A stretch of DNA of 64,000 bases. Source: Mobula hypostoma (Eukaryota). How positions within the stretch are numbered: the first letter of the stretch is position 1; each line of letters starts with the position of its first letter. Location of the stretch: contig NC_086097.1 of assembly GCF_963921235.1 (NCBI RefSeq), positions 75,826,001 through 75,890,000 on the forward strand, in the 5' to 3' direction. Below, one piece after another: positions 8,689 to 61,197 of this stretch. The translations under genes were made by a program, and so were the position numbers. Below the pieces are notes generated by a model. The model saw nothing but the letters and a program-made list of their open reading frames with translations, was not told the origin of the DNA and searched no databases.

Positions 8689-8841
8689 GTAAAAATCAGA
8701 GTCTGAGGCATAATGTATATAGAGGAACTGTTTACTTTGGTAGCATGACTTTTAAAACCACCCTCAATATTTGACTTCATTCCAACCTTAGATGTTAGGA
8801 ATCTTTGTTTATACGTGCAACCATAGGCTTTATTATATAGG

Positions 8842-34022: not shown

Positions 34023-34642
34023 GCAACATACATCAAAGTTGCTGGTGAACGCAGCAGGCCAGGCAGCATCTCTAGGAAGAGGTACAGTCGACGTTTCAGG
34101 CCGAGACCCTTCGTCAGGACTAACTGAAGGAAGAGTTGGTAAGAAATTTGAAAGTGGGACGGGGAGGGGGAGATCCAAAATGATAGGAGAAGACAGGAGG
34201 GGGAGGATGGAGCCAAGAGCTGTACAGGTGATTGGCAAAGGGGATATGAGAGGATTATGGGACAGGAGGTCCGGGGAGAAAGACTGGGGGGGCAGGGGGA
34301 GGGACCCAGAGGATGGGCAAGGAGTATAGTCAGAGGGACAGAGGGAGAAAAAGGACAGAGAGAGAAAGAATGTGTGTATATAAATAAATAACGGATGGGG
34401 TACGAGGGGGAGGTGGGGCATTAGCGGAAGTTAGAGAAGTCAATGTTCATGCCATCAGGTTGGAGGCTACCCAGACAGAATATAAGGTATTGTTCCTCCA
34501 ACCTGAGTGTGGCTTCATCTTTACAGTAGAGGAGGCCGTGTATAGACATGTCAGAATGGGAATGGGATGTGGAATTAAAATGTGTGGCCACTGGGAGATC
34601 CTGTGCTTTGTCCGCCAGCATCTGCAGAATTCCTGTTGTTTT
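34023..34642 (-). mobile_element. young 5'-truncated PLE with 14-bp TSD
   Basis: agtacttttattga at 34009 and 34643; DLPVATHFNS...QPDGMNIDFSNFR*; inverted tail piece at ~34614-34642. Confidence 0.93.
34086..34121 (-). ncRNA. minimal type-I hammerhead ribozyme motif (intact core)
   Basis: Minus strand AGUC CUGACGA AGGGUCUCGGCCU GAAA CG UC^GACU: stem I AGUC/GACU, CUGANGA and GAAA boxes, UC cleavage site. Confidence 0.75.
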
Positions 34643-34741
34643 AGTACTTTTATTGAATTTGAATTGGCTTATCTGTCTTTGTAAGATCTTCAGTACAGGA
34701 GATGCAGGTATTAAAGTACTTAAATGCAAAACTACCTCTTC

Positions 34742-37129
34742 CAGTGGTCCCCAACCACCGGTATCGGGCCGCAAAGCATGTGCTACCAGGCCGCGAGGAA
34801 ACGATATGATTTGGTGATATGAAACAATATGAGTCAGCTGCACCTTTCCTCATTCCCTGTCACACCCATTGTTGAACTTGAACGCACGCAAGGTCATCAG
34901 TTGGTCATTAACCTACAACTACTCGATGAGTTAAAAACAAACGTCGCTTGAGAGTTTCTTTGGAAGAGGTGGTAGGGGACATAAAAGGCCTAACGATGAT
35001 GATAACGCAGAGACACCTGAGGCCAAGACTGCAAAAAAAAAAGAAAGCTTCCTTCAACAGAAAATAACAAGAGTCGTACATAAAATATGGCTTTATTGCG
35101 ACCAGTAACTCACACGGTCCAAGCCCCCTGTATGTGATATGTGGAGACAAGCTGTCTAATGAGGCAATGAAGCCCTCAAAACTGCTTCGGCACCTTGAGT
35201 CCGAGCGCCCTGCACTTAAAGACAAACTCGTTGAGTTTTTTGAGTGGAAAAAAACATGAGCAAGCCGGACAGAAGCAAGTGCTGAGAGCCACCGCCTCCA
35301 CAAATGCTGCTGCTCTGAGAGCGGTGTACTTAGTGGCTAGCCGTATTGCTAAGGCTAAGAAGCCTTTCACTGTTGGTGGTGAATTGATTCTGCCTGCTGC
35401 CAAGTACATGTGCTGTGAACTGTTGGGAGAAGCTACAGCTAACAAGATGGCGCAGGTTTCTCTTTCAGCTACCACAGTTTCAGGGAGAATCGATGACATA
35501 GCGGAGGACATCGAAGCACAGCTGTTAGAACAGCTGAGCGAGTCACCATGGTATGCTATCCAGGTCGACGAGTCTACCGATGTCAACAACAAGGCAGTAC
35601 TGCAGGTCTATGTGCGATATACATTTCAAGACGATGTGCACGAAGATATGTTGTGTGCACTGCTGCTGCCAACTAACACAACTGGGGCAGAACTATTCAA
35701 GTCTTTGAATGACTACATGTCAGGCAAACTGGGCTGGTCATTCTGTGTTGGAATATGCAGAGACTGGGCTGCAGCTATGACTGGACTGTCTGGTTTCACT
35801 ACCCGAGTCAAAGGGGTTGCTCCTGAATGCCAGTCTACACACTGTGTCACACACAGGGAAATGCTGGCTAGCCGAAAAATGTCACCTGATCTTAACAGCG
35901 TATTGAGTGACATTGAAGCTATCAATCACATCAAAGCAAAAGCCCTTAACTCACGTCTGTTTGAGCAGCTTTGCGAGGAAGTGGATGCAGAGCACAAACG
36001 CCTTCTCTTAAACACTGAAGTCAGGTGGCTATCAAGGGAGAGAGCCCTGGCCGGGGGTTTTGAGTTAAGAGAGCAGCTGCAGAGATTTCTTTCTGGCAGC
36101 ACACTTCAGTGACGAGGAGTGGATAGTAAAACTTGCTTATCTGTGTGACATCTTCAACCTGCTCAATGAACTCAATTTGTCACTTCAGGGGAGAATGACA
36201 ACTGTCTTCAAGTTGGCAGATAAAGTGTCTGCTTTCACAGCCAAACTAGAACTGTGAGGATGGCGAGTGGACAAGGGCATATTTGACATATTCCCAACAT
36301 TAGCTGGGATTTTGGGAGAGACCGAGGCTGCACCGTCCTTCTTACAGCTGGTGCGTGATCACGTATCTTCACTGTCGACAGAATTTGAGCGTTTATTCCC
36401 CACTGCAAATGACCCAAGACGTGCAAAGGAATGGATCCGTGACCCATTTGTGAATGTCCCCTGTAAATCATCCATGTCAGCGCGGGAAGAAGATCAACTT
36501 GAGCTTGCAAATGACGGTGGGCTGAAAAGTATGTTTGACATAACATCTCTGCCGGCATTCTGGATCAAAATCAAAGCTGAATATCCTGAGATAACCACAA
36601 AAGTACTGAAAACGTTGCTTCCATTTCCAACATCATATCTCTGCAAGGCAGGGTTTTCTGCAATGAATGCAACGAAAACTAAATTACAGAATAGACTGGA
36701 CATAAAGAACACCCTTCGAGTATCACTGTCTCCTATCACCCCGTGTTGCAGGGAAACAAGCCAAGGGCTCCCACTGATTCAGCGATATTGGTGTGTTGCA
36801 ATGATTTTATATGTTCATACGAGGAAAATATGCGCTGTGTGTTTAATATCCAAACGTTACTTAAAATATTATGATGCTATTGATTTATAAGTGACATATA
36901 ATTGACTTATAATGATATTCATGTGAGGAAAATATGTGTTGTTTAATATTAAATTCGTTAGATAACCCCTTTTAGAAACGAAATTGAGTGTATTAGCCAC
37001 TTATAAGTGACTTATAGTTGACTTATTACCTATATTCTGGTCGTGATTAACCCCCCCCCCACCCGGTCAGCAAGAATATTGTCAATATCAAACCGGTCCG
37101 CAGTGCAAAAATAGGTCGGGGACCCCTTG
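34742..37129 (+). mobile_element. Buster/Charlie-type hAT transposon, near full length, defective transposase
   Basis: TIRs cagtggtccccaacc / ggtcggggaccccttg; TSD acctcttc / acctattc; BED-finger remnant (MKPSKLLRHL), IQVDESTD, HCVTHRE, EVRWLSR and LLPFPTSYLC.AGFS. Confidence 0.95.
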
Positions 37130-37477
37130 ACCTATTCTACCACAGAGAAAGAAGAATACATGTTTTAAGTTTTCCCTCATTGCCTGCTCCAACCAGGCTG
37201 AATTTGCCACAGTACTGTTGACTAGGACATGTTGTCTTACTTCGGTTCAGTGATATTATTGAAATAGATGAGTGGATGGATATCTACCAAACAAACAACT
37301 ATTTCCTGAGCATTTTTTTTCTAAACAAGTGTATTAGATACAGAAATTGAAGTTTAGTTTTAACATGTATTTTTTTAAAACTATGTGGTGTATTGGTACA
37401 ATGACCAAAGCATATGTATTTTTGCCTCTTAAGTAGTTTAATTATGATTGAGCCAAGGGGAAAAAATCAATTCATAC

Positions 37478-37848: not shown

Positions 37849-38074
37849 CTGCAAAATTTGTAATGTGAAAGGTGTCAGCAAATTGTAGAGAATGAGATAA
37901 TATACTCATGAACAACCAATGGCTTTCTATGTGTTGATTTATATATACTCTTCTATTACAGAGTCCTAGAACACAGAAACAGACCTTGGTCCACAGTGAT
38001 CAAGATACCTCATCCAACTAGTCGTATTTGCCAGTGTTTGGCCCATAACCTTCTAAACCTTTTCAATCCATATA

Positions 38075-39699
38075 TCTCAAATACAAGGAAATCTGCAGGT
38101 GCTGGAAATTCAAGCAACACACACATAAAATGCTCTTGGCTCCTCCCACTTCCTCCAAACTAAAGGTGTAGCCATGGGCACCCGTATGGGTCCCAGCTGT
38201 CTTTTTGTTGGCTTTGTGGAACAATCCATGTTCCAAGCCTATACTGGTATCCGTCCCCCACTTTTCCATCGCTACATCGACGGCTGCATTGGCACTGCTT
38301 CCTGCACGGATGCTGAGCTCGTTGACTTCATTAACTTTGCCTTCAACTTTCACCCTGCCCTCAAATTTTCCTGGTCCATTTCCGACACCTCCCTCCCCTT
38401 TCTTAATCTTTCTATCTCTATCTACTGATGTCAAGCCTACGGACTCTCACAGCTACCTGGACAATTCCTCTTCCCATTCTATCTCTTGCAAAAATGCCAT
38501 CCCCTTTTCGCGATTCCTCCGTCTCCACCGCATCTGTTCTCAGGATGAGGCTTTTCATTCCAGGACGAAGGAGATGTCTTCCTTTTTTAAAGAAAAGGGC
38601 TTCCCTTCCTCCACCATCAACTCTGCTCTCAAATGCATCTCTCCCATTTCACACACATCTGCTCTCACCCCTTCCTCCTGCCACCCCACTAGGGATATGG
38701 TTCCCCTTGTCCTCACCTATCACCCCACCAGCCTCCGGGTCCAACATATAATTCTCCGTAACTTCCGCCACTTCCAACAGGATCCCACCACTAAGCATAT
38801 CTTCCCCTCCCCGCCTTTCTGCTTTCCGCAACTCCCTTGTCCATTCGTCCCTCCCCATCCCTTCCCACTGATCCCCCTCCCGGCATTTATCCTTGTAAGC
38901 AGAACAAGTGCTACACATGCCCTTACACTTCCTCCCTCACCAACATTCAGGGCCCCAGACAGTCCTTCCAGGTGAGGCGACACTTCACTTGTGAGTTGGC
39001 TGGTGTGATATACTGCGTCCGGTGCTCCCAGTGCAGCCTTCCATATATTGGCGAGATTGGCGAGACCTCACGCAGACTGGGAGACCATTTCACTGAACAC
39101 CTACGCTCTGTCCACCAGAGAAAGCAGGGTCTCCCAGTGGCCACACATTTTAATTCCATGTCCCATTCCCATTCTGATAAATCCATCCATGGCCTCCTCT
39201 ACTGTCAAGATGAAGCCACACTCAGGTTGGAGGAACAACACCTTATATTCCATCTGGGTAGCCTCCAACTTGATGGCATGCACATTGTCTTTTCTAACTT
39301 CCATTAATGCCCCTCCTCCCCTTACCCCATCCCTTATTTATTTATTATTTTTTTCCCCTTTTTTTGTTGCTCTTTTTTCTCCCTCTGTTCCTCTCACTAT
39401 ATCTTCCTCTGGTGCCCCCTCCCCCTTTCTTTCTCCCTAGGCCTCCCGTCCCATGACCCTCTCCCTTCTCCAGCCTCATATCCCTTTTGCCAATCAACTT
39501 TATAGCTCTTGGCTCCATCCCTCCCCCCTCCTGTCTTCTCCTATCATTTTGGATCTCCCCTCCCCCTCCCACTTTCAAATCTCTTACTATCTCTTCTTTC
39601 AGTTAGTCCTGACGAAGGGTCTCGGCCCGGAATGTCGACTGTACCTCTTCCTATAGATGCTGCCTGGCCTGCTGCGTTCCACCAGCATTTTGTGTATTG
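38075..39699 (+). mobile_element. PLE with 11-bp TSD inserted into a CR1 3' end
   Basis: caatccatata at 38064 and 39700; inverted tail at ~38080-38135; GVAMGTRMGPS, RYIDG and VIYCVRCSQC..YIGE motifs; hammerhead-like motif at 39605-39640 with GAAA>GGAA. Confidence 0.93.
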
Positions 39700-39710
39700 C
39701 AATCCATATA

Positions 39711-42050
39711 CCTGTTCAACTGTCTTAAAAATTGTTATTGTACTTGCCTCAGCCACTCCTCTTGCATCTCATTCCACATGTATACCACCCTTGGTGTTAC
39801 AAAAGTTGCCCCTTGTATTCCTCTTAAATCTTTCCCCTCTCACCTTAAACCTATGTCCTCTAATTCTTGATACTTCAACTCTGAAGTCCATTTACCCTAT
39901 TTATGGCTGTCATGATTTTATACACCTCTATTAAGCTTATTCCTTGGAGCAAAGGAGACTGAGGGGCAAAATCCTAACCTCTCCAACCTCTTCCTATAAC
40001 TCAGTTCCTCAATATTTCTGCACTCTTTCTAGTTCAATAATATCTTTCTTATAACAAGGTGACTAAATCTAAACATATTACTCCAAGTGCAGCCTCACCT
40101 GTATAACTGTACCACGACCTCCCAACCTTTATACACAATGCCCTTCTTCGCCACTTTATCTGTGACTCCAATTCCAATGAAACATGGTACTCGTACTCCA
40201 AGGTACCTCTGTTCTGCAACACTCCCCGGTACCCTATTATTCACTTTTAATGTTCTACAATTTTCCAAAATGTAACACCTTGCACTTATCCAAATTAAAT
40301 TACATTTGCCATTCCTGGACCCACTTACTCTGTTGATCAAGATCTTTCAGTAATTTTTGATAACCTTCTTCACTGTCCACTCTACCACCTATTTTAGTGT
40401 CATCTTGGACATTCTGATCCAGATCATTGATATGCCTGACAAACAATAATGGGTCCAGCACTGAACCGAGGCACACCACTAGTCACTGGCCTCCAGACTG
40501 AGTAACACACTGCTAACATCCACTGATTTATTTGCTCAGGCATATGTGTAACCAATTCGCCAGTGCTCCCTGGAGTACATGAAGTGTAACTGTCCAAAGC
40601 AGTCTACCATGTGGAACTATCATTGCTTTGCTACGCTTCTAAGAGGCACATTTACTGCCCTCTAGTCTTCTGGCACCTGACTCTAACAATGATGTAAACA
40701 TCTCAGCCAGAGTTCTCAAATTTTTCCTGCTAGCCTGCTGCAGTATTCTTGGATACTGGAAATTGTCTACCTTCATTCCTTCTGAGACATACAGCTCCTC
40801 CTTTACTGTATCACAGACCATCCCATTTACTTATCCTACTTCCATAGCCTTCATGTCTTCACAGTAAAAATAGCGGAGAAATACTAGACCATAAGACATA
40901 GGAGCAGAATTAGACCATTTGGGCCATTAAGTGCTCTGCTATTCCATCATGGCTGATTTATTATCCTATCCCTCTCAGTCCATTCTCCTGCCTTCTCCCC
41001 ATGACCCTTGACTCCCTTAATAATCAAGAACCTATCAATCTCTGCTTTAAATATACCCATGACTTGGCCTCCGCAGCCCTTTGTGGCAATGAATTCTACA
41101 GTTTCGCTACCCGCTGGCTAAAGAAATTCTTCTTCAACTCTTCTAAAGGGATATCTTTCTCTTCTCAGGCTATGGTCTCTGTTTTTTGACTGCTCCATTA
41201 TAGGAAACATTCTCTCCACATCCACTCTATCTAGGCCGTTCAATATTTGATAGGTTTCAGTGAGGTCCCACTCTTATTCTTCTAAACTCCAGTGAGCCCA
41301 GACCCAGAGCTATCAAGCGCTCCTTGTATGTTAACCCTTTCATTACCAGGATCATTCTTGTGAACCTCCTCTGGACCCTCTCCAATGCTAGCACATCCTG
41401 TCTTAGAAAAAGGGCCCAAAACTGCTCTCAATACTCCATGTGCAGTCTGACCAATGCCTTATAAAGCCTCAGCATTACATCTTTGCTTTTGTATTCTAGT
41501 CCTCTCAAAATGCATGCTAACATTGCATTTCCCTTCCTTACCACCAACTAACCTGGAAGCTAACCTTTAGGGAATTCTGCATGACGATGCCCAAGTCTCT
41601 TTGCATCAGTGATTTCTGAATTTTTACCCTGTTTAGAAAATAGTCTACACCTTTATTCCTTCTACCAAAGTGCATGACCATACAATTTCCTACACTGTAT
41701 TTCTTTGCCCATTCTCCCATTCATTAAGAACCTTGTCCACCTCCTGTAGCTCCACGCAAATGTGTCCCCTTTGGTCGTTGAGGGGTCTTATTCTCTCTCT
41801 AGATTCTGTTTCCCAAAATATAAACAGAAAATCTCTTTTAATATTTTTTAATCTCCTTTGCCAAAGTTTTCTCATGTCACTTTTTTTGTTGCTGATTTCC
41901 TTCTTGAGTATACTTTTACAATCCTTGTACTCCTCCAGCAATTGCTTGATCCCAACCCAACCCATTCCTCCTTTATTCCCAGACAGGATCTCAATACTCT
42001 CATCCTTCAGTGTTTCCTGCTTCTAGAAACTCTCAGATCATGCCCTAAGT
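39711..42050 (-). mobile_element. old CR1 (3' tip at ~37965-38074), itself split by a second CR1 at ~40886-41716
   Basis: CR1 ORF2 motifs in ORFs 40095-40340, 41538-41720 and 41690-41965; ccataagacatagga tail at ~40889. Confidence 0.8.
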
Positions 42051-43599
42051 GAAGCCCCGTGCTTAGTAACCCACCAGCTGCCTTAAGATTCCAAAGGGTA
42101 CTTTCCATTCCATATTGTTTCCTTTCCCATTCCCTTACTGCAGGAAATTATAAATCATTTAATAATTCTGTGGAATTTTTTTTACATTGTTGTGAATGAG
42201 AGGACAGTTTGTTATTTAAGTTTAAATTCTCATCTTGGACTAAAAGCTAGGAAACCTCCTAAACTTGGGGGCCAACATTTCATAGTTTGAAAAGATATGA
42301 CTTCATAGTGAATGAAGTAGCTTTTAACCTCCAGAATTCCCTAAATATAATCTAGCATTTAAGAAAGGAAGTGTGGCAGTCTATCAACCAAAAACCAACT
42401 GGGCTGACAATAGGAGGGGAAAATATTATAACTTATTTTGAAAGATAAGGTAATATGGCACTTGAGAAACCTGATAACAAGCAGAGTTGACATGGTTTTA
42501 TGAAAGCAAAGTCATGTTTGACAAATGTATCAGTAGTTTTGAGGGTATAACTAGCTGCTAACTAAGTGAAACACAAGTTGAACCATTTTGCCCTGTCATT
42601 CAATGTCTTTAATTATATATCATACTTGGATTTAAAATATACAATTGCTATTTTTAGAATTCTAACCCTAGCCTCTTGTTTCCTATCAATATCTTAAAAG
42701 CTCCAATCACAGCTTCCTTTATTGTTCTAAATTACAGGAAATAGACTTAGTTGCTGTCTATCTTCATAATTTAACTCTTTCTTTAGGTTTCCCTTTTGCA
42801 CATCTGATTAGCTTTAGAAAATCCAAATATACTATATCTCCTACCTTCTCACTCAACAGTACAAATGGAAACATTACAAAGATACAAAGGCAAACCTTCA
42901 GTACTGGCATGTGGGCAATCACTCACTTGGGTCCAAAGAGGAAGAGCACACTACCTTCAAAGCACTTAGAATATAGGTTCTAAAGTGAAATAAGCAGTCG
43001 ACATTTTGGTTCAAGACCCTTCAGTAGGACTCTAAAGTGAAATGCCATCCTTGTCCATATATTGTTCAGGTGCAGAAGATATCGAGAGGCTAGTAGAACA
43101 TAGGTTTTTCTGTATAAAGTACTCGAGTACAAGAGGATAGTAATAGTATCTCTATAGGAAGATCTAGTTAGTTCAGTGCAATAGTACGTTTATGCAGCAT
43201 GCAATCCAAAGCAATACTTCCAGCTCAATGGGTAGTACTCAATATCTATGCTCCAGATGAAGTCTAATCAGATCGTTGCAAGGATGTATTTAGCTGGGGA
43301 GAATAGTAACCATCTAGGACTAGACTGAGATGATAATTTGTCTTTTTGAAGGATTGGGGTGGGAGGGCAGGACTGTGAATAATTAGAATTATCTACTACA
43401 GAGAACTGAAGCTGGCTTGTCATGTTTGGAAAAAGTATTAACTGAAACTTTATGAACACAGGTAATTAAGATAGAGTGGGGAAAATAGTCTGAGCTATAT
43501 GTTTAACTACACTATTGAATGTGGAAGTGCTGGCTTGAACATCCAGATGGCCCACTCCTAATTATTAAGTCTTAAATTAAAGGAAAAAAAAATCAATAT

Positions 43600-45078: not shown

Positions 45079-45752
45079 CCATAGAAACTACAGCACAGAA
45101 ACAGGCCTTTTGGCCCTTCTTGGCTGTGCCAAACCATTTTCTGCCTAGTCCCACTGACCTGCACACGGACCATATCCCTCCATAACCCTCCCATCCATGT
45201 ATCTGTCCAATTTATTCTTAAATGTTAAAAAAGAACCCGCATTTACCACCTCATCTGGCAGCTCATTCCATACTGCTACCACTCTCTGTGTGAAGAAGCC
45301 TCCACTAATGTTCCCTTTAAACTTTTCCCCCCTCACCCTTAACCCATGTCCTCTGGTTTTTTTCTCCCCTTGCCTCAGTGGAAAAAGCCTGCTTGCATTC
45401 ACTCTATCTATACCCATCATAATTTTATATACCTCTATCAAATCTCCCCTCATTCTTCTACGCTCCAGGGAATAAAGTCCTAACCTATTCAACCTTTCTA
45501 TGTAACGGAGTTTCTCAAGTCCTGGCAACATCCTTGTAAACCTTCTCTGCACTCTTTCAACCTTATTTATATCCTTCCTGTAATTTGGTGACCAAAACTG
45601 AACACAATACTCCAGATTCGGCCTCACCAATGCCTTATACAACCTCATCATAACATTCCAGCTCTTATACTCAATACTTTGATTAATAAAGGCCAATGTA
45701 CCAAAAGCTCTCTTTACGACCCTATCTACTTGTGATGCCACTTTTAGGGAAC
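45079..45752 (-). mobile_element. young CR1 3' end with open ORF2 C-terminus
   Basis: ORF 45145-45810 has no stop over LYKALVRPNLEYCVQFWSP...TRGHGL...WNELP. Confidence 0.93.
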
Positions 45753-45894
45753 CTGTTATCTCTGGTCCTAGACTCATCCTCTGTAGGAAATATCCTCTCC
45801 AATTCCACACCGTTAAGGTCTTTTAATTTTCGATAGTTTTCAATGAGACCCCCCCCCCTCATTCTTCTAAACACCAGCAAGCACAGGCCCAGAA

Positions 45895-49155: not shown

Positions 49156-49627
49156 CTGCAAAGAATAAACAGATGTTACCTTGGTTTTGTAAATTTTAAA
49201 GAATGAATAGTTAAACCTGTAATTGGACAATTAATTGCATTTCCTGAGAACTAGCCAACAAGGTAACATTTATTCACCATCTCTATATATCTTGTGGACA
49301 TTAACATCAATCACATGATGTGACAGTAGAACTGGTTGTAGCCCAAGTACAATGATGGTAACATCGTTTCTCTAAAGTTGGGTTATTACAACACTGTTAC
49401 AACTCTAATAAATTTCCAGGTACTATCTCACAAATCACATGATTTAACTAATTCAGGTTCACTGCATGTTCAAGTGAGATTTTAATTTACAAACCCAGCA
49501 TGATTACCATTAAAATGTTTTATGTATTATCTAAGTGCTGCTGGAATAATTACTTGTCAAAAACTATCTGGCTATTTTACATCTGATTCAGAGGCAGGCC
49601 AGGAAATGATGGGAGAAAATTGCTTAC

Positions 49628-49772
49628 AAATCCAGCACAATTGTCACAGAAGGTAGGCTTCAGATATGTTGTCTCTTGGAAATTATGGAGAAAGCCTTGG
49701 ACTGACTTTGAGAAGATGGAACTGGACCTCATGAAATAAGCTGTAATCTCCTCTCTGCTTATTAGTCCTTCA
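49628..49772 (-). CDS. RASGRP1: RASGRP1 exon (approx. 13), EF hand 2 and start of C1, 145 nt
   Basis: ttttccag|T GAA GGA...GGA TTT|gtaagc; (C)[48 protein letters not shown]. Confidence 0.97.
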
Positions 49773-52317
49773 CTGGAAAACGAGAATTTTTCATTAGTGC
49801 AGCTTTTACATACAAGTGGAACAAATATTTAACTGGAGCTCTGCGTAAACTATTTGGTAAAAATGGTAGCAAAAGCAGACTTCAGGCTTTGGTAAAAATT
49901 ATAATCTGCAATAATCACTGCAAACTATACTTTCTGCCACATTTTAAATAACGCACAAGTGAAAACATTATTGAGTACAATTAAGCTATGCTGTCATAAA
50001 CAAACCCGTACTTGGGCAATCATTCGTGTGACACTCAGGAATAAAACAGTGCTGCATGACGACATTGATTTACTTAATAGAAGAGTCAAAGATGTGTGCT
50101 TAGCTTACTATATTCTGTGTGCACTTTTTGAGAGTAAAAGACAATTGATGTAAAGATGTAATATGTTTTGCTTCAGAATTGGGTAATATTCACTGTTTTA
50201 ATGGCTGCAATCTGCCTCTGGTTTTTCGTGAGTGCCATTAGCTGCTGGCTTTTTTGCCACCATTTTGGTGCTGGACAGGTGCGGTGAAGCCATTAAGCTG
50301 TAAATTTTACTTCTCTATTGCAATAGTAGTGAGCACTAAGCTGCATGTTAAACTCCTGACCATGAATGGATTTAGATTTCTGATGCAGGATAAGTAATGA
50401 AAAACCTTAATGGTACTCCTGTCAAAACTGACAAAAGTTTTCAAAAATTTATCATGCTATTTTAACAATTGCTGATGAAACACAAATGGACTGAGTTCAA
50501 ACACACCAGTAAAACCCATTATGCCATAGTCTTCAAATGGTAATACTTAACTGTAAAGACAGTAGTGATATTCTTTTAAGTACATTTCTGATTCTTTGCT
50601 GAAATGGCTTGCAGAGAACTGGCCTACTAAGAATCCATTTTTAAAAATATAATGTCAGATATACTCCTGTTTTCCCTTTGTCAAGTGTTGCTTAAGAGAA
50701 TGTGTTGTATTTAGACTAATAAACCAAGTGTGAATATAGTGGTGGCACATTTATTTCACTATCTCTGTTCTCCAGTATCAAGCATTACAATTACTGTGTA
50801 AGCCTGCGAGTATTGCACTTGTACAATTGGCCTACAGGATATACAATGAGTTGGTTCATGTAGACCTTTGTTAATTTAGTGTGCCAGTTTGTTGCTTCAC
50901 ATGTAAATTTGTTCATTTCTTTGCACTTAGAATTTTCTGTATCCTGCTGGAGACCTGAGTGAGTCATGCCTATATTTATAGAAATAAATACTTGTTATAA
51001 TTGCTAAACAAAAAATAATAGCCATGCAAGAATGGTGATGGTGCTGTCTGTGAAGAGTTTGCATGTTCTGCCCATGTGTTTCCTCCCATCTCCTAAAGGG
51101 GTCAAGGTAGGTTAATTAACTGCAGTAACATACTCGAAAGGGTTGTGATTGATGGGAATATGTGAGCAAATTGATTTGCAGGGATGTGGTGAAATAAGAG
51201 GGAGCACGAGTCCAATGGATTTGCTTCCCTATAGCTGGTGTGTATCTGATTGGGGGTGGAGGGGGGGAGATAGCTTTTGTCCATTCTTTGTAAGATTAAG
51301 GTACTCAGTATAAATCATGGAGATTTTAGGGAAGGAGCAGAAAAGCTTGATTCAATTATGGTATGAAAAATTGAGGGCTATTGAGGAGGAACTGGGGCAA
51401 ACCTGCTTCCAATGAAAATAGGGTTTAATGCAAAGCCATAAGGTAATTAGGAAAATCACCAAAGAGATGAAGGAGAAAATCTTTTGTTTAACCAGTGAAC
51501 AGTGAGTTGAAGGTGAGGGAATAAGGAAATATGCAACACATGGTAAAACTTGGAAAGGAACGTTGAAAGCAGGCCTGGAAGATGAATTGGGATAAATTAG
51601 TTGCAATGAGATTTTCTTCCATCTACAACTATGAATTTAGACAGATTAGATACAGAAAGAAAAAATGGAGAGATTGAAATGAGAATGGATGGCAGAAAAC
51701 ATGTAAAATCTCAAAAATAAATTTCTACCTTCCAACTTTATTCTTTTTTGAATTGAGAGTGAGTTGCATTGAACGAATGAATACATAATGATAGATTTTG
51801 TCATTTAATAGTGGTTTTAAATTATATTTGCAACACAATCTTCAGCATTTTGAAGCCTCTCAAGAGACTGGGAGTGAATTCCTCTTGTTAAACTAACAAA
51901 GCATTTTCACACTTTGTACCTGGCAATTTCTGACTTCATTACTCTTCTTGACACAAACCGCTGGAATTCTACAGATAATGCGTGACTTTATTATAGACAT
52001 AGAATTTGTTAGCAAAACTATCACATTCCAAGGGAGTTGTTTTCCCTTATTCAAGTACATAATCAACAAAGCCATAGAAAAAGAGCAGGGGAATGAGAAT
52101 AATGGGTTAATGCTTTCAAAGACCTGGCATGCATCTAAAATGTCTTCCTTGAATACTGTTGCATGCGTGTGTAATAAAAGTACAAACTCAAAAAAAACTG
52201 GGATTATGATCTGAACATTTAACTCTTTCAGTCATACTAAAAACATTCAATTCTGTTGGAATGCATGCCATCATACTTTCGGGACATTTTACACCATTGT
52301 GAAATTGCTTTACCTAC

Positions 52318-53560: not shown

Positions 53561-54568
53561 CTAAATAAAATAAAGTCCTGTAAGTTACATTGCAACGTGT
53601 GTGTGGGAAAAGGACATGTATTAATGTGATACAGTAGCTGGATACTTGAATCATCAAGCAGTTCTGACAACCTGATACAATTTCAGACAATAGTAACCTC
53701 CTATTAATTTTGTGGAAGCTATATGTATCCAAGAATAATTATATGTTGAGTCTTTGCTAATTTAAACTGTTGATGGCCAATGTTAAGTCATAAATCTGGT
53801 ATTCCTTTTTAAACAAGTGTTTTATAATTATTAAATAATAAAAGAATGTATGAATCTATCTTTCAACAGTTTCCAGTTCTCCATTATATTAAAATAAGTA
53901 TTCCACAGCCTCAAATATTATAAACTAAAATTATCATAAGGATAGGGATGCCAAAATATGCACTGGATAAGTTCAGCGGGTCTTCAATCTGAAATACTAG
54001 CTCTGTTTTTCTTTCCACAACTGCAGTCTGGCCTGTTTAGTGTTTCCAGTATTTATGGTTTTTATCTGTTTTTATTGAAGATTTCTAACATCTGTAATGT
54101 TTAAATTTTCAGGTACTTTGGACCGTTTTAGTCTTCATATTATAAAAACAGAGAGGAAGACAATTGAGAAACTGCAAAGAAATTACCAGCTAAAAAACCA
54201 AGCAGAGATTTTATCTGCTGATATTGGACTAGCCAGAGGCCTTTGCTATAGAATAGAGAAGACTGAGGCATTTTACAGGGTGCATGTCAGAAGAAGTTTT
54301 CTTAGCAGGTCAAAATTATAAATAAAAGACAGCCAATAATGAATTCAGTAGGATGTTCACAAGAAACTATTTTATCTAGTCAATTGTTAGAATATGGGAG
54401 TTGTTGCCATCAGGAATATCTGAGATAAATGGAACTGTGATGCTGACTAAATTCAACATTGAGTAAAGAACAAATGGAGCACAAAGAATCAGCCCTTATA
54501 GCACACCTGCACTGTTAGTTTACACTAATTCTATTGTTTTTCTTTGGGAAAGAAACACCAAAAACCCA

Positions 54569-55749
54569 GCAACACACATCAAAGTTGCTGGTGAACGCAG
54601 CAGGCCAGGCAGCATCTCTAGGAAGAGGTACAGTCGACGTTTCAGGCCGAGACCCTTCGTCAGGACTAACTGAAGGAAGAGTTAGTAAGAGATTTGAAAG
54701 TGGGAGGGGGAGGGGGAGGGGGAGATCCAAAATGATAGGAGAAGACAGGAGGGGGAGGGATGGAGCCAAGAGCTGGACAGGTGATTGGCAAAGGGGATAC
54801 GAGAGGATCATGGGACAGGAGGTCCAGGAAGAAAGACAAGGGGGGGGGGGGGAATGCAGAGGATGGGCAAGGGGTATATTCAGAGGGACAGAGGGAGAAA
54901 AAAGAGAGTGAGAGAAAGAATGTGTGTATAAAAATAAATAACAGATGGGGTACGAGGGGGAGGTGGGGCATTAGCGGAAGTTAGAGAAGTCGATGTTCAT
55001 GCCATCAGGTTGGAGGCTACCCAGATGGAATATAAGGTGCTGTTCCTCCAACCTGAGTGTGGCTTCATCTTTACAGTAGAGGAGGCCGTGGAAAGACATG
55101 TCAGAATGGGAATGGGATGTAGAATTAAAATGTGTGGCCACTGGGAGATCCTGCTTTCTCTGGCGGACAGAGCGTAGGTGTTCAGCAAAGCGGTCTCCCA
55201 GTCTGCGTTGGGACTCGCCAATATATAGAAGGCCACATCGGGAGCACCGGACGCAGTATATCACCCCAGCCGACTCACAGGTGAAGTGTCACCTCACCTG
55301 GAAGGACTGTTTGGGGCCCTAAATGGTGGTAAGGGAGGAAGTGTAAGGGCATGTGTAGCACTTGTTCCGCTTACAAGGATAAGTGCCAGGAGGGAGATCA
55401 GTGGGGAGGGTTGGGGGGGGAAGAATGGACAAGAGAGTCGCGTAGGGAGCGATCCCTGCGGAAAGCGGGGGGGGGGGAAGGGAAAGATGTGCTTAGTGGT
55501 GGGATCCCGTTGGAGGTGGCGGAAGTTACGGCGAATAATATGTTGGACCCGGAGGCTGGTGGGTGGTAGGTGAGGACCAGGGGAACCCTATTCCTAGTGG
55601 GGTGGCAGGAGGATGGGGTGAGAGCAGATGTGCGTGAAATGGGGGAGATGCGTTAGAGAGCAGAGTTGATAGTGGAGGAAGGGAAGCCCCTTTCTTTAAA
55701 AAAGGAAGACATCTCCCTCATCCTGGAATGAAAAGCCTCATCCTGAGAG
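54569..55749 (-). mobile_element. young PLE (1.2 kb) with intact GIY-YIG C-terminus and 10-bp TSD
   Basis: caaaaaccca at 54559 and 55750; ORF 54971-55264 IYCVRCSRCGLLYIGESQRRLGDRFAEH...FSNFR. Confidence 0.95.
54632..54667 (-). ncRNA. minimal type-I hammerhead ribozyme motif (intact core)
   Basis: 36 nt identical to 34086-34121. Confidence 0.75.
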
Positions 55750-56571
55750 CAAAAACCCATTTGCCACAACTATTAGACCAAATCATGACAAGGTTATTGA
55801 AATGGCGATTTCAGTGGTAGATAAACTAATCATGCAGAAACTTCTCAACAAATGATGCAACCTATTTTGAAAGTACTCTAATATATCCAGATAGTCAGTA
55901 AAGTAATTTAAATTGATTTAACTTGGATTACACCTCCTTGGATGGGGAAAAAGAGTACACATTAGCACAGGGATCCAAACCAATAATGCATCATTAATTA
56001 AACAGTTTTGTTCAGATATGTCAGCTTAATTTTGAATTTGGACAATTGTATAAAGTAAGGGGTATTTTATCAGTTACCCAGTGAAATACCTTTCCTAGTG
56101 AAATGTTCATCAGGTCTGATGGATTAATACTTGGTTTACATATACAGTATATCAAAAAAAAGTGGCTCACAAATAAAACAAATGTCTTAAATTCAAGTCA
56201 TCTTGGCTTCCCAATTTCAACAAATGCTTACCTCCATACAGTATCTCATTTATAAATACAAAAAAAGGTCTATTACTTTTAATGTAACAAAGAATTCTTT
56301 TTGCAATGTAAAGCTTCCCGGACACTTAACATGCTTTCAGTCCGAAATCAATTACATGCTTGCTTAAAGAGCGGTAAAGCTCCTGATTTGAACACGATCA
56401 AATTTGATTGTCTTTCAAATTTAACCACCTGCAATTTCACGATATATAATTTATCTGGCAATCTGACAAGATAATTGCTGCTACAATCAGCAGTAATGCA
56501 TATCACAATATGGCACTTAATATGAAACAGCAATATCAAATGACAGGAATAATATAAGGAAACTTTCTTAC

Positions 56572-56652
56572 TGGAGCTTTATTGTTCCTTGGCTCGCGTG
56601 CATATGAAAGCTCGTAAATTTCATCTTCTGAGTAGTAGAGGTCTAGTGAGAG
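56572..56652 (-). CDS. RASGRP1: RASGRP1 exon (approx. 10), 81 nt
   Basis: atttcag|CTC...CCA|gtaaga; [27 protein letters not shown]. Confidence 0.97.
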
Positions 56653-58404
56653 CTGAAATAGTGCAGAGTACCAGTAAAACAAACTGCTTTCAATAAATGT
56701 TTCAGTTTTCACTCACTGCACCCATGTTTGGTCAGTACCTTTCATTGTATATTGATAGACCCACTAATTATGAAATGTTATACTCACAGTTCAATTAATG
56801 ATTTACTGATGACTCAAACTACTGCAAATACCTACAGAGGGCACCAGTAACCCTGATTACAGATGGCCTACATTAACATGCAGTCTCACTTTATTTAATT
56901 GCATCAATAAAACCCTTTAAAGAAAACCAAATATGGAATATTTTAGACTAAAATTTCAATTATGTTTATGGTTCATAATTCTCTCACCTCTTCTTGACCA
57001 CATTGCTGGAATAAGATTACACAGGTTTCCTAAGAACTAAGGTCTTGCCAATAAGCATTAGAGAGAATATTAACATTGAGGACCAAAGTAGATCATGTAA
57101 CTACAAAGGATATCTGACTCTTGCCCTATTCCATACTCACCAAATGTTTACTAGTGCTTTAAGGTTTCAGAAATAGATACCATATATTACTTATACATTC
57201 CCTCTCTTTATTCAGATGTGCTGTTCCAGTGCTTCCCAAGACTGGTCTATAAGGCCACCAGAGACTAGGTTCACATTCATTGGAATGGCTCTCCTGCATT
57301 GTTATATAACTACCATTCAACATAAAAATACTACTTTAAAAAGCTTGTATGACATAATTTAAACTGGCATAGCAAGCAGCAAATTAATGTACAAAATAAA
57401 TTCACTGGCAAATACATCTCTTCCTTAAATCAATGCAGCAAAAAAACTGACTGATAATAGTCTTATTATTTGAACAATACTATCCTGGTACACAGAGATC
57501 AGTGAAAATATATTCCTTTATATATTCATCACCACCCCTACCATTTATCCCCAAATTTTACTGTCTTCAGTGGCTATGACAGAAGTATGGAATAATATAT
57601 CTACTTCTGCTGCTCTTGAGCGGGCAGTTTGGAGAGGCATAAAGTTGATGTTAGTGATGACACAGTCCAGAATTCTGCTCAGCATTTCGTGAGAGAAAAG
57701 CAAGATCGCAAACAAAAATTCAATTTTTTATATGTCTCCATAAAGCCTGGCATTGAATTACATTATGATTTTTCAATGTAATCCACAATGTTCAGCAATA
57801 CCATTGGCAAATGATCCTGGAAAAATCATAGTATTTAACACTTAATAGAGGAGCAAGTTAATGGTGGCCAGTCTGACTATTTCTGACTGATTTGCATCTT
57901 GATTTATTATCAGCAACTGGATTCTATTTCACATTCAGTAATGGCGTGCCCAGAGGTTAATAATCCCTAATAGGATGCTGTAATTGAAGAACACTAGGTG
58001 AATTTGTTTGATTACACCTAGCAACAGCTATGAAGCAGGCAGATTTTGCACTCTGAATAGTAAGCTGCGCTCTCACCAATCATCTGCATGCCTGTCAAGC
58101 ATTGACTCTTCTGCAACCAGCACTGCAAATACCCAGAGGCAGCTCACTGGCTTTCAAGTGAATCTGCCAAAAAAAGTGCCAGTGAAGAACAGTGCAATAC
58201 AATTAATACTCATTGAAACCAATTAATACTTACTGATTAAAATTTAAATTCAAAATTCTGCTTGCAGAATCACAGAGCCCTGCTAAATGGTCTCTGTACA
58301 AACACAAAGGAAGCACTGTGGCAAGCTCAAAGTGAAACAAGAACTCAAGATGTATTTTTGCTTTTGCAACTGTATTTTGTATATTTGTTCAACTTATTGC
58401 TGGC

Positions 58405-58444
58405 CATGTGGTTGAGATAAACCACAGGAAGAAAAGGACAGCTG
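58405..58444. promoter_or_regulatory. candidate haematopoietic/lymphoid enhancer motif cluster
   Basis: TGTGGTT (RUNX), AGATAA (GATA), AACCACA (RUNX), CAGGAAG (ETS) and CAGCTG (E-box) within 40 bp. Confidence 0.45.
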
Positions 58445-58755
58445 TATTTAAAAGGCTCGTCTTTATGAGAGAAGTGTGCTGTACACACCTTTTATAAACA
58501 TTAAGGAAATACAACTAAAATCCTGCATTTATGTAGAATAGGTAATTTAATGAAACACTCCACAACAATTAATAGGACACAACAGAATTAATATTGCCAA
58601 ATAGAAGTATGGTAATAGCATATAGAAAACTGATACCGCAGACCAAGCCACAGAAAGATATTTCGGAGATGACTCAATGCTTGATCACAGATAGTCTTTA
58701 AGGAGCGTATTAAAGGACAAGAGAGAAGCGGGAAGTAAGGAAATAATTAGAACCT

Positions 58756-59187
58756 CACACACAAAATGCTGAAGGAACTCAGCAGGTCAGGCAGCATCTA
58801 TGGAAATGAATAAACAGTCAACATTTCGAGCTGAGACCCTTTTTTCAGGACTGGAAAGGAAGGGGGAAGATGCTAGGATAAGGAGGTGGGAGGAGGGGAA
58901 GGAGGATAGCTAAAAGGCGATAGGTAAAGTCAGGTGAGTAGGAAAGATAAATGCCTGGAGAAGAAGGGATCTGATAGGAGAGGAGAGTGGACCATAGGAG
59001 AAAAGGAAGGAGGAGGGAGCCCAGATGGTAACAGGCAGGTGAGACGAGGTAAAAGTATGGAATAGAAAGAGAGGGGAGGGGGAGGGTATTTTTTTAACCA
59101 GAAGGAGAAATCAATATTCACACCATCAGATTGGAGGCTACCAAGATGGAATATAAAGTGTTACTCCTCCACCCTGATGGTAGCTTT
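58756..59187 (-). mobile_element. older PLE 3' fragment
   Basis: EE.HFIFHLGSLQSDG.NIDFS remnant; degenerate hammerhead at 58816-58852; imperfect TSD attagaacct / attagagctt. Confidence 0.8.
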
Positions 59188-59416
59188 ATTAGAGCTTAGG
59201 GGTAAGGCGGCTGATATTGGACGTATATATTAGGGGAATGCAAGAAGCCAACGTTTGTAAAGATAAAATAATATGGTTTGTATGGTTGAAGGAAATGTAT
59301 AAATGGCAGTGGTGATGACGCACTAAGTGGGGTCGGTACTACAGGAAAAGAGCATGGTAAAGCTCTTAGTTCATTAAGAAATATGAAAATTTGCCCTTTA
59401 ACTGTTCAGTTAATAC

Positions 59417-59572
59417 TAGCTCCTTATGGTGGGTCTCAGCCCAAAATCTCCACTGTTTATTCCTCTCCATGGATGCTGTAGGAGCAGACTCTATGGGCAA
59501 AAGGCCTAATTTTGCTCCTATGTCTTATGGTCTATGACCTGCTGAGTTCCTCCAGCATTTTGTGTGTGTTAC
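59417..59572 (+). mobile_element. mini PLE tail with 11-bp TSD and an embedded CR1 3' tip
   Basis: tcagttaatac at 59406 and 59573; CR1-type end gggcaaaaggcctaattttgctcctatgtcttatggtct inside. Confidence 0.75.
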
Positions 59573-61095
59573 TCAGTTAATACCATCTTACTTTGAATTA
59601 GTAAAGTTCATTGTTAAAGTGTATGATCACTTGACTCATAAACTAAGAGCTCAAGACTCTTGGTAAGTTAAGTTTCCTGCAGCTCATTTTTGTTTTGCTC
59701 ATTAATTTGCTTGCAACTGAACTGTGCAAGTGGGATTTCCTGGTGTACTATTTTGAAGTACTGTGTAACTGTAAAGGTACATCCAGAAGATGGCTTTCTT
59801 TTGCTTTGTCCATCTTAGTGCCACATTAATACATGTAAGATGTAAACTGGCATTTTGAGGTGAAAGTGATGACCAGGTGAATCATACTTTGTTGCTTACA
59901 ATATAGGTTTCACATTGTAGTTCAGTTAAAATTTTATTTTTTCTCTGGATAAATAAATGAAAACTTTAGAAGCTTTCAGAAGATTGGAGCAAATAGTTTT
60001 AATAAAACTGCCGAGGTTCAAAGCTTTTGAACTGTTTAGCTTGACTGATAGGTCATTATATTGTGATAGTTATAAAAGGCTATGGTGGTGAAATATTGAC
60101 ATTTTTAACAGTACTCAACTTTTTTTGAAAAAAAAATTAAAATAATACAAATAGCTATAATTTGTTCTTATAGATAAAACTGGCTGACAAATGATCATAA
60201 TATTTAAATGAATTACACCCTATCCTCGTTATATGCGTCTTCAGACTATGCGGATTCACAGTTATGCGTGGAACCTATTTCTACCAACGTCTCCTTATAT
60301 GCGTCCAAAATTCACAGTTATGCGAGGAGCACTGCCTTCCCGCCAATACAAGTCACGTGCGCAGGCTTCACAGTCTCACTATTGGGATGAGAAGCACTGC
60401 TTTCCCACCAATACAAGTCAGGTGCGCGCGCCTCACAATCTCTCTCCCGCCACTCTCGCATTGGTTTTGACAAGGTGTGGATGCACGATCTTAAACTTTT
60501 GTTGGTTTTACCTACGGTGCAGTGATCTTCTGCTTGAAATATTTAACTATGCCTCCTAAGCATCCGATGTCATGTCTTGGTCTGTCAGCCCAGCGGCAGA
60601 GAACTGCTTTAACACTTGAAAAAATGTTGGAAATTATAAACAGCGTGGCATCAGCTGAAGGTAACACAGCTCTGGGACGCTACTGCCGGGAACAGAATCT
60701 TGCCTTTAAAGTTCTTTTGTTGCTTGACAATGCGCCAGCCCATCCTAAAAATTTGGACAGCATTCATCCTAACATAACAGTGCTTTTCCTGCCGCCTAAC
60801 ACAACATCACTGATTCAACCACTCGACCAGTGTGAGCCACATTCAAGGCGTACGTATTTTTTTTTACGGCGAACTATCTCTCAGATGCTGCAAGCAACAG
60901 ATGATTTTGAAAATCCCGGGAGTTTACCAACGGTGAGGGAATGGTGGAAGTCGGAACACTTGACACAAATGGCGATGGACATGGACCCAAGTTTAGAACG
61001 GAGTCAGCATTTCAGTCATTCCCTGCTGTCAACCTTTCTCCCCTACAAGCAAATTTATGCTGAAAAACAAAATGCTGCCAAGCAAACAACCCTCA

Positions 61096-61197
61096 TACAT
61101 CAAAGTTGCTGGTGAACGCAGCAGGCCAAGCAGCATCTATAGGAAGAGGTGCAGTCGACGTTTCAGGCCGAGACCCTTCGTCAGGACTAACTGAAGG
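61096..61197 (-). mobile_element. ~100-bp PLE tail nested in the Tigger
   Basis: 16-bp direct repeat aagcaaacaaccctca at 61080 and 61198. Confidence 0.92.
61153..61188 (-). ncRNA. minimal type-I hammerhead ribozyme motif (intact core)
   Basis: 36 nt identical to 34086-34121 and 54632-54667. Confidence 0.75.

What the first reader, a model, noticed from the sequence alone, without database searches (positions are those of the whole stretch)
34086..61188. Three identical minimal hammerhead ribozyme motifs in sense orientation in RASGRP1 introns
Seen: the same 36-mer (RNA AGUC-CUGACGA-AGGGUCUCGGCCU-GAAA-CG-UC^GACU) sits on the minus strand at 34086-34121 (intron 16), 54632-54667 (intron 10) and 61153-61188 (intron 9). 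It has both hammerhead core boxes, a 4-bp stem I, a short stem II (register ambiguous, possibly with an extra A after CUGACGA) and almost no stem III apart from the palindrome ACGU. Established: Penelope-like elements carry minimal type-I hammerheads thought to cleave as dimers through a palindromic stem III. Inference: all three intact copies are transcribed within one RASGRP1 pre-mRNA and could dimerise in cis (the 54.6k and 61.2k copies flank exon 10), cutting introns co-transcriptionally. Copies on the other strand (18286, ~21214, 39605) each have core or stem changes.
Basis: partly seen in the sequence, partly recalled or inferred. Interest (0 to 1): 0.8.

Follow-up and report, generated by a model that had tools for sequence, protein, structure and literature searches.

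The report
Penelope-element minimal hammerhead motifs in introns
The three identical 36-base "ribozyme" motifs are real. They are the standard minimal hammerhead carried near the 3' end of a very abundant Penelope-like retrotransposon (about 33,000 identical copies in this genome), so finding them in RASGRP1 introns is ordinary, and nothing shows that they cut the gene's RNA.

Summary
The 36-mer sits exactly on the minus strand at 34086-34121, 54632-54667 and 61153-61188. The minus strand is the sense strand of a RASGRP1-like gene, and the latter two copies flank an expressed exon at 56572-56652.

The motif is not special to this gene:
- It lies about 65 nt from the 3' end of 5'-truncated Penelope-like element (PLE) insertions. 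The evidence is a GIY-YIG endonuclease ORF just upstream, a 15-16-nt target-site duplication, an inverted 3'-end piece, and head-to-head inverted copies.
- The genome holds 32,886 exact copies, split equally between strands, and at least 102,000 core-intact variants.
- A 64-kb window is expected to hold 0.6 exact copies.

The anatomy matches the published PLE "min-HHR": both core boxes, a 4-5-bp helix I, an unpaired A between positions 9 and 10.1, a 4-bp helix II, and no helix III apart from the palindrome ACGU. This family has G10.1·U11.1 instead of G-C.

Three tests gave no support for activity or selection:
- No Rfam hammerhead model matches.
- Genomic copies show no covariation beyond controls.
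- Copies do not start preferentially at the predicted cut site.

Published work reports very low cleavage that depends on dimers or on PLE protein. Cutting of RASGRP1 pre-mRNA by dimers formed in cis is unsupported. The finding is a new member of a known kind, of low interest. The scan also noted similar PLE-HHR insertions nearby.

The parts
34086..34121 (-). Minimal hammerhead (min-HHR) motif, copy 1. The predicted cut lies after the C at 34090.
   Evidence: Exact 36-mer.
34022..34603 (-). 5'-truncated PLE insertion (about 580 bp) that carries copy 1. It holds the end of the endonuclease ORF, the HHR, the conserved AGATGCTGCCTGGCCTGCTG block and the 3' end ...GATGTATGTTGCT.
   Evidence: Repeat families D2, D3, D17, I5 and I12; alignment A1.
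54632..54667 (-). min-HHR motif, copy 2. The predicted cut lies between 54636 and 54635.
   Evidence: Exact 36-mer. Transcriptome contigs from other copies bridge the site.
54568..55751 (-). 5'-truncated PLE insertion (about 1.2 kb) that carries copy 2.
   Evidence: Inverted and direct repeat matches to the 38136-39679 and 19819-21285 copies.
54974..55288 (-). Stop-free remnant of the PLE ORF C-terminus: a GIY-YIG endonuclease domain that includes Cys/His residues.
   Evidence: Pfam PF01541, 22.8 bits against a cutoff of 22.6, E 1.2e-4. The homologous ORF at 38837-39307(+) shows a C-x4-C-x2-C linker ahead of the domain. ESM Atlas neighbours are GIY-YIG clusters from Chordata and Rotifera.
61153..61188 (-). 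min-HHR motif, copy 3.
   Evidence: Exact 36-mer.
61096..61197 (-). PLE 3'-end insertion of about 100 nt (HHR plus 3' block only). It is flanked by a 15-16-nt target-site duplication (T)GAGGGTTGTTTGCTT at 61198-61213 and 61080-61095.
   Evidence: Read directly from the sequence.
56572..56652 (-). RASGRP1 exon lying between copies 2 and 3 (context).
   Evidence: This is the only unique stretch of 54300-56800 covered by contigs of runs X4, X5, X7 and X9, and it sits inside contigs of up to 4-4.7 kb. It matches 4l9m residues 364-394.
18272..18392 (+). Antisense short PLE 3'-end copy with a decayed HHR at 18286-18321. An inverted 22-nt piece of the element's 3' end abuts it at 18252-18273.
38136..39687 (+). 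Antisense 5'-truncated PLE copy (about 1.5 kb). Its HHR at 39605-39640 has a broken core (GGAA in place of GAAA).
19819..21285 (+). Antisense copy of an older PLE family. Its HHR region at 21213-21284 has a broken first core box (CUGCUGA).
58782..58867 (-). Sense-strand decayed HHR/3' module of an older PLE family. Similar modules lie at 8871-8947, 28637-28713, 42975-43041 and 653-718, all on the minus strand.

Best explanation
The three 36-mers are the minimal type-I hammerhead motif (min-HHR) that lies in the 3' region (pseudo-LTR) of a young, very successful family of Penelope-like retrotransposons (PLEs). Each motif arrived in a RASGRP1 intron as part of an independent 5'-truncated PLE insertion, of about 580 bp, 1.2 kb and 100 bp. 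They are identical because the insertions are recent, not because the host selects for them.

In the element's own life cycle the motif is thought to act on PLE RNA. Two motifs brought together in tandem copies would pair through the palindrome A15.1-C-G-U16.1 to build helix III, and cleavage would follow C17. This step is inferred from the literature, where such cleavage is weak and helped by dimers or by the PLE protein.

In the host pre-mRNA the copies are most likely inert passengers.
For: Shown here:
- Exact copies at the three sites.
- A GIY-YIG ORF 300-400 nt upstream on the same strand.
- A target-site duplication around the 100-nt copy.
- An inverted 3'-end piece at 18252-18273.
- Genome-wide, close opposite-strand pairs are always head-to-head (one search list; L010).
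- 32,886 exact copies, 16,386 on one strand and 16,500 on the other, with 0 in the control; 102,041 core-intact variants; about one HHR/3' module per 4-6 kb in a random 214-kb sample.
- The motif meets the published min-HHR hallmarks: CUGANGA and GAAA boxes, an unpaired nucleotide between 9 and 10.1, a 4-bp helix II, a 4-5-bp helix I and palindromic 15.2-16.2. Older families carry G10.1-C11.1 in 16 of 28 distinct copies.
- Position N7 varies between families (C, U or A) while the rest of the core is kept.

From the literature:
- PLE pLTRs always carry such hammerheads, thousands per genome in coelacanth and Xenopus, with low dimeric activity (PMC4209133, PMC6765202).
- The HHR lies near PLE 3' ends, and inverted 5'-truncated copies and 'tails' are typical of PLEs (PMC8557442).
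- The anole PLE hammerhead is protein-assisted, is not needed for insertion in vitro, and no RNA-seq reads ended at its cut site (PMC11167929).
Against: - No Rfam hammerhead model matches, even at E<=10 on a 71-nt piece. This is expected for a motif without helix III, but it means a covariance model does not confirm membership.
- Copies within this genome show no compensatory covariation beyond controls. The covariation score is 0.203 against 0.199 in shuffles. The excess of double changes at pair 2.1-1.1 has an odds ratio of 2.4, which is no larger than the roughly 3.1 seen for an unpaired control site.
- This family has G10.1·U11.1 rather than the usual G-C.
- The thermodynamic MFE folds are not the hammerhead fold.
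- The copies in the window contain no reverse-transcriptase domain, so the PLE assignment rests on the endonuclease and on insertion architecture.
- Cleavage was not tested.
Confidence: 0.88

Rival explanations
1. The three sense-strand motifs pair with each other within one RASGRP1 pre-mRNA (or with PLE RNAs in trans, perhaps helped by PLE protein). They cut the introns co-transcriptionally and so lower or modulate RASGRP1 expression.
For: The three cores are intact, all are in sense orientation, and two flank an expressed exon. PLE-derived RNA carrying the motif is abundant in transcriptome assemblies of several species, so partners in trans would exist.
Against: - Helix III would be only 4 bp between sites 6.5 and 20.5 kb apart.
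- The overlapping palindrome GUCGAC and upstream pairing compete with the hammerhead fold.
- Published PLE hammerheads are barely active even as tandem dimers and need PLE protein (PMC4209133, PMC11167929).
- No read ends were found at the site in anole RNA-seq (PMC11167929).
- At least 102,000 core-intact copies with no strand preference imply that such motifs are tolerated everywhere.
- The RASGRP1 exon appears normally spliced inside long contigs.
- Genomic copies show no excess of 5' ends at the cut site: 766 against 727 one base downstream.
Confidence: 0.04
2. The motif only looks like a hammerhead. It is conserved in PLE 3' regions for another reason, such as a recognition element for the element's reverse transcriptase or endonuclease, or part of the promoter or 5' UTR of the tandem unit. 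It never cleaves.
For: - No covariation and no Rfam match.
- A G·U at 10.1-11.1 in the most successful family.
- No fossil 5' ends at the cut site.
- HHR mutants do not affect insertion in vitro, and PLE clades without an HHR proliferate well (PMC11167929, PMC8557442).
Against: Both core boxes are kept across families in this genome, while N7, the one freely variable core position, changes. C3/G8 mutants and the compensatory double mutant behave as expected for a true hammerhead in the anole PLE (PMC11167929). PLEs of fungi and plants carry fully active hammerheads at the same place (PMC4209133).
Confidence: 0.15
3. The identical copies come from a segmental or intragenic duplication of RASGRP1 sequence rather than from independent transposition.
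For: Copies 1 and 2 share 93-97% identity over about 580 bp (families D2, D3, D17).
Against: The similarity stops at the element boundaries and the flanks are unrelated. The three copies have different lengths. Copy 3 has its own target-site duplication. The same 36-mer occurs 32,886 times genome-wide.
Confidence: 0.01

Closest known systems
Minimal hammerhead ribozymes (min-HHR) of Penelope-like elements (Cervera & de la Pena 2014, PMC4209133; Lunse, Weinberg & Breaker 2017, cited through PMC6765202)
   Same: Type-I topology, CUGANGA and GAAA core boxes, an unpaired nucleotide between 9 and 10.1, a short helix I (4-5 bp), no helix III apart from palindromic 15.2-16.2, a position in the PLE terminal repeat or 3' region, thousands of dispersed and mostly solitary copies, and pairs on opposite strands.
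   Different: Helix II is only 4 bp with a tetraloop, against 6-8 bp in the Schistosoma and Drosophila examples. The dominant family has G10.1·U11.1 instead of G-C. The copy number (about 33,000 identical, at least 102,000 core-intact in 3.5 Gb) is far above the 4,000-9,000 reported for coelacanth and Xenopus. The copies are highly uniform rather than highly variable.
Poseidon PLE of Anolis carolinensis (PAc) and its hammerhead (Frangieh et al. 2024, PMC11167929)
   Same: A vertebrate PLE with a GIY-YIG endonuclease, an HHR in the pLTR and an optional 3' 'tail' extension. That work provides the experimental picture used here: protein-assisted cleavage, not needed for insertion.
   Different: In PAc the ORF starts inside the HHR. 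Here the nearest ATG lies in the conserved block about 20 nt downstream of the motif. No biochemical data exist for this family.
Intronic hammerheads HH9 and HH10 of amniotes (Rfam RF02275 and RF02277; de la Pena & Garcia-Robles 2010, cited in PMC7229834)
   Same: Sense-oriented hammerheads inside introns of protein-coding genes.
   Different: Those are single-copy, ultraconserved, complete hammerheads with a stable helix III and loop-loop contacts. The motifs here are multi-copy transposon parts without helix III, and they do not match those Rfam models.
Non-LTR retrozymes of animals (PMC7229834; bioRxiv 10.64898/2026.07.22.740005)
   Same: Non-autonomous HHR-bearing units related to PLE pLTRs. 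The short copies here of about 100-120 nt carry only the HHR and the 3' block.
   Different: Retrozymes are tandem repeats with canonical type-I hammerheads that yield circular RNAs. The short copies here are solitary, have a target-site duplication, and look like ordinary 5' truncations.

Membership tests
Hammerhead ribozyme (catalytic core) | Conserved core: C3 U4 G5 A6 N7 G8 A9, G12 A13 A14, the A15.1-U16.1 pair, and H17 at the cleavage site | tested here: met
   CUGACGA ... GAAA-CG-UC is read directly in all three copies. The A15.1-U16.1 pair can only form between two molecules.
Hammerhead ribozyme (catalytic core) | Match to a curated hammerhead covariance model (Rfam Hammerhead_1, _3, _II, HH9 or HH10) | tested here: not met
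   No hit at gathering score on the window, and none at E<=10 on pieces of 401 nt and 71 nt.
Hammerhead ribozyme (catalytic core) | Site-specific self-cleavage after H17 | not testable with these tools
   Only assembled contigs were available, not raw RNA reads. As an indirect test, genomic copies do not start preferentially at the site: 766 against 727 at the next base.
PLE minimal hammerhead (min-HHR) | [quoted passage not shown] | tested here: met
   With the A bulged, helix II pairs in 87.3% of cells across 28 distinct copies. The register that pairs this A gives 63.4%.
PLE minimal hammerhead (min-HHR) | Conserved G10.1-C11.1 pair | tested here: inconclusive
   The three copies and the 32,886-copy family have G·U. 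Across the sample, G-C occurs in 16 of 28 copies and G·U in 6 of 28. The U sits in what was a CpG.
PLE minimal hammerhead (min-HHR) | No or minimal helix III, with palindromic 15.2-16.2 that allows a dimeric helix III | tested here: met
   A-CG-U gives ACGU, which is self-complementary.
PLE minimal hammerhead (min-HHR) | Families within a genome show covariation or compensatory changes in helices I and II | tested here: not met
   Covariation score 0.203 against 0.199 in shuffles, reached by 202 of 500 shuffles. The genome-wide 2x2 table for pair 2.1-1.1 gives an odds ratio of 2.4, no larger than the roughly 3.1 for an unpaired control. Changes are mostly one-sided wobble changes.
PLE minimal hammerhead (min-HHR) | Location in the terminal repeat or 3' region of a PLE | tested here: met
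   The motif lies 300-400 nt downstream of the GIY-YIG ORF and about 65 nt from the 3' end in four copies.
Penelope-like element (EN+ clades) | C-terminal GIY-YIG endonuclease with Cys/His motif and a CX2-5CxxC linker | tested here: met
   PF01541, 22.8 bits against a cutoff of 22.6. C-x4-C-x2-C and the Cys/His residues are read in ORF 38837-39307. Atlas neighbours are GIY-YIG clusters.
Penelope-like element (EN+ clades) | Telomerase-like reverse transcriptase upstream of the endonuclease | tested here: inconclusive
   All copies in the window are 5'-truncated. Only a short stretch with a YIDD-like motif (RYIDG) remains, and it has no Pfam hit.
Penelope-like element (EN+ clades) | Insertion architecture: 5' truncation, an adjacent inverted 5'-truncated copy, an optional 30-40-bp tail | tested here: met
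   Head-to-head pairs only (9 of 9 close opposite-strand pairs in the list; L010:3077-3195). An inverted end piece at 18252-18273. An optional extension after TGTTGCT.

The most novel reading that the evidence does not exclude
Sense-strand PLE min-HHRs in introns are not inert. When the PLE protein or abundant PLE RNAs are present, they pair in trans or in cis and cut host pre-mRNAs. With about 10^5 intact motifs, this genome would then carry a transposon-driven, genome-wide layer of intron cleavage that dampens long genes such as RASGRP1.
Probability: 0.04. Interest if true: 0.7.

Novelty: new member of a known kind. Interest (0 to 1): 0.15.

Why it matters
For RASGRP1 it most likely does not matter. 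The motifs are transposon cargo found in introns throughout this genome.

The useful results are three:
- These sites should be annotated as PLE 3' ends, not as host ribozymes.
- The helix II register is resolved in favour of the bulged A.
- This 3.5-Gb genome carries one of the densest populations of hammerhead-core motifs on record: at least 102,000 core-intact copies, about 33,000 of them identical. Published figures are 4,000-9,000 in coelacanth and Xenopus, and about 120,000 retrozyme copies in the roughly 28-Gb axolotl genome.

That density makes the organism a good system to test whether PLE hammerheads cleave in vivo, and whether sense intronic copies have any cost.

Tried and rejected
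- **Rfam scans** at gathering score and at E<=10 found no hammerhead family.
- **MFE and cofold predictions:** the hammerhead fold (-6.0 kcal/mol) is not the minimum (-10.0). Predicted dimers use the GUCGAC/AGUCGACU palindrome or flanking pairing, not ACGU. This says little, because the core is non-canonical.
- **Covariation** on 29 copies from a random 214-kb sample was no better than shuffles.
- **Genome-wide 2x2 counts** for the C2.1-G1.1 to U-A change gave an odds ratio of 2.4. I rejected this as evidence because an unpaired CpG site shows an odds ratio of about 3.1 between the same lists, which points to age heterogeneity.
- **'Fossil cleavage' test:** copies whose 5' neighbour differs at the cut site number 766, against 727 one base downstream, so there is no pile-up.
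- **Conservation contrast:** the exact HHR 36-mer (32,886 copies, four CpGs) is only modestly more frequent than the adjacent downstream 36-mer (27,361 copies, one CpG).
- **RNA ends:** no raw-read RNA run was available. The contigs show only presence and bridging of the cut site.
- **Lunse et al. 2017** is not held in the library.
- **Segmental duplication** was rejected on the flanks.

Full report
**Observation.** The minus strand reads AGTCCTGACGAAGGGTCTCGGCCTGAAACGTCGACT at 34086-34121, 54632-54667 and 61153-61188. A search allowing 3 mismatches finds these three exact copies plus plus-strand copies at 18286 (2 mismatches) and 39605 (3 mismatches). Shuffled sequence gives none. A further diverged copy lies at 21213-21284.

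The host gene is RASGRP1-like and runs on the minus strand. Stop-free stretches match the RasGRP1 structure 4l9m: 62678-62974(-) to residues 275-371 (E 5e-45), 56539-56712(-) to 364-394 (E 2e-10), and 49580-49828(-) to 464-515 (E 1e-22). Contigs of four transcriptome-like runs cover, within 54300-56800, only 56572-56652 as unique sequence, and they do so inside contigs of up to 4-4.7 kb. So the motifs are intronic and in sense orientation, and the 54.6k and 61.2k copies flank a real exon. I did not check the intron numbers.

**What the motif belongs to.** The 36-mer is embedded in longer repeats: 34022-34603(-), 54568-55751(-), 38136-39687(+) and 19819-21285(+).
- About 300-400 nt upstream on the same strand lies an ORF remnant with the signature ...VIYCVRCSxCxLxYIGE..RRLGDRFxEHLRSV.... 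It reaches the Pfam GIY-YIG gathering score (22.8 against 22.6 bits). A C-x4-C-x2-C linker precedes it. Its ESM Atlas neighbours are GIY-YIG clusters from chordates and rotifers.
- The 61.2k copy is a 100-nt insertion (61096-61197) bounded by a 15-16-nt target-site duplication.
- The 18.3k copy abuts an inverted 22-nt piece of the element's own 3' end.
- Genome-wide, every close opposite-strand pair among the first 100 exact matches is head-to-head (9 of 9). One sampled locus joins two copies inside helix II (L010).
- Some copies carry an optional extension after the usual 3' end.

These features (a C-terminal GIY-YIG with a Cys-rich linker, strong 5' truncation, an adjacent inverted truncated copy, an optional tail, and a hammerhead near the 3' end) describe Penelope-like elements as given by Craig et al. 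(PMC8557442) and Frangieh et al. (PMC11167929). The copies in the window hold no reverse-transcriptase domain because all are 5'-truncated, so that defining feature remains untested.

**How common it is.** The window's genome (3.476 Gb) contains 32,886 exact copies of the 36-mer, 16,386 on one strand and 16,500 on the other. The reversed control pattern gives 0. A relaxed pattern keeps both core boxes and three helix I pairs but frees N7, helix II and positions 15.2, 16.2 and 17. It matches 102,041 times, against 2 for the control. In a random sample of 214 kb (the window plus fifteen 10-kb stretches), the HHR/3' module of all ages occurs roughly once per 4-6 kb. By my arithmetic, 0.6 exact copies are expected per 64 kb, and P(>=3) is about 0.02. 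Three on one strand is a 1-in-4 event. The contrast of 3 of 8 sense copies intact against 0 of 6 antisense copies intact is not significant (P = 0.15). The damaging changes are mostly CpG transitions, which reflect age.

The present motif reads as follows: helix I AGUC/GACU (plus a possible U·G), CUGACGA, a bulged A, helix II GGGU-[CUCG]-GCCU, GAAA, CG, UC^. On an alignment of 29 sampled copies, the register with the bulged A pairs in 87.3% of helix II cells. The register that pairs the A gives 63.4%. Older families have G10.1-C11.1 (16 of 28 copies). The dominant young family has G·U, a C-to-U change at a former CpG. N7 differs between families (C, U or A) while the other core positions are kept.

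**Tests that did not support activity or selection.**
- No Rfam hammerhead model matches at any threshold tried. This is expected, since those models include helix III.
- Covariation on the sampled copies equals the shuffled expectation (0.203 against 0.199).
- Genome-wide counts for the innermost helix I pair are GUC..GAC 102,041, GUU..AAC 717, GUC..AAC 13,805 and GUU..GAC 2,249. The odds ratio for the double change is 2.4. An unpaired CpG site (GAAACA) is enriched about as much between the same lists (13 of 100 against 32 of 100, odds ratio about 3.1). The excess therefore reflects copy age, not compensation.
- If cleaved RNA were a common template, copies should begin at G1.1. Copies with a foreign purine in place of C17 number 766, and copies with a foreign pyrimidine one base further number 727. 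There is no pile-up.
- Energy models do not favour the hammerhead fold, and predicted dimers use other palindromes.
- Transcriptome contigs from other copies run across the cut site, and no end cluster is reported. Contigs cannot show RNA ends, however.

**Mechanism.**
- *Shown:* the motifs are parts of independent PLE insertions.
- *Inferred from the literature:* in PLE RNA, two motifs from tandem units can form a double hammerhead through ACGU and cleave after C17. Reported rates are very low even for dimers (PMC4209133; review PMC6765202). In the only purified system, cleavage needs the PLE protein and is dispensable for insertion, and no RNA-seq reads began or ended at the cut site (PMC11167929).
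I put it at about 4%.

**Verdict.** The identification as a PLE-type minimal hammerhead is correct. The host-gene function is unsupported. The element is a new member of a known kind, notable only for its abundance and uniformity in this genome. Notes from this scan record similar PLE-HHR insertions at 61080-61213 and about 12 kb before the window, so the scan has met this element before on neighbouring DNA.

Noticed in passing
G000 genome-wide; window 1-64000: The density of hammerhead-core motifs is very high. There are 32,886 identical 36-mers and at least 102,041 core-intact variants in 3.48 Gb, and about one HHR/3' module per 4-6 kb in a random 214-kb sample. That is far denser than published counts for other vertebrates.
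   Followed up: partly
G000:C1 list; L010:3077-3195: Close opposite-strand pairs of the motif are always in head-to-head order (9 of 9). Some abut directly or overlap inside helix II. A transcript across such a pair would form a long perfect hairpin.
   Followed up: partly
window 54598-54616, 34052-34070, 18337-18355, 21262-21280, 39656-39674, 58780-58798: A second block, AGATGCTGCCTGRCCTGCTG, lies 20 nt downstream of the HHR. It is as conserved across old and young PLE families as the HHR itself, while the spacer between them differs. It contains an ATG and may be the RT initiation or recognition site, or the ORF start of the tandem unit.
   Followed up: no
window 18386-18402; loose ends at 54568: An optional 3' extension ...TGAATTTCCAGCATCTG follows the usual element end TGTTGCT in many copies. 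It is partly complementary to the AGATGCTG block and probably corresponds to the PLE 'tail'.
   Followed up: partly
window 18272, 61197; L001:1550/1553: Several independent short copies begin within a few bases of each other, about 10-18 nt upstream of the HHR. This hints at a preferred 5' end, or a non-autonomous 'HHR plus 3' end' unit of about 100-120 nt.
   Followed up: no
window 21835-22208: A tandem array with a 12/15/27-nt period lies here. On the minus strand it translates to a long stop-free Ser/Thr/Pro/Ala-rich frame (21673-22263). It is unrelated to the finding.
   Followed up: no
window 17315-17744 and 27817-28244: Inverted repeat arms of 92-96% identity lie about 10 kb apart (I2 and I7). 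They belong to another young repeat family inside the gene.
   Followed up: no
window 6424-7279, 40303-41458, 45148-45822, 46722-47170 (minus strand): ORF remnants resembling the C-terminal region of LINE-type reverse transcriptases (for example ...LVRPHLEYCVQFWSP...RVQRRFTRMLPG...) occur in several sense-strand copies. Together with the PLE copies, much of the sequenced introns is transposon-derived.
   Followed up: no
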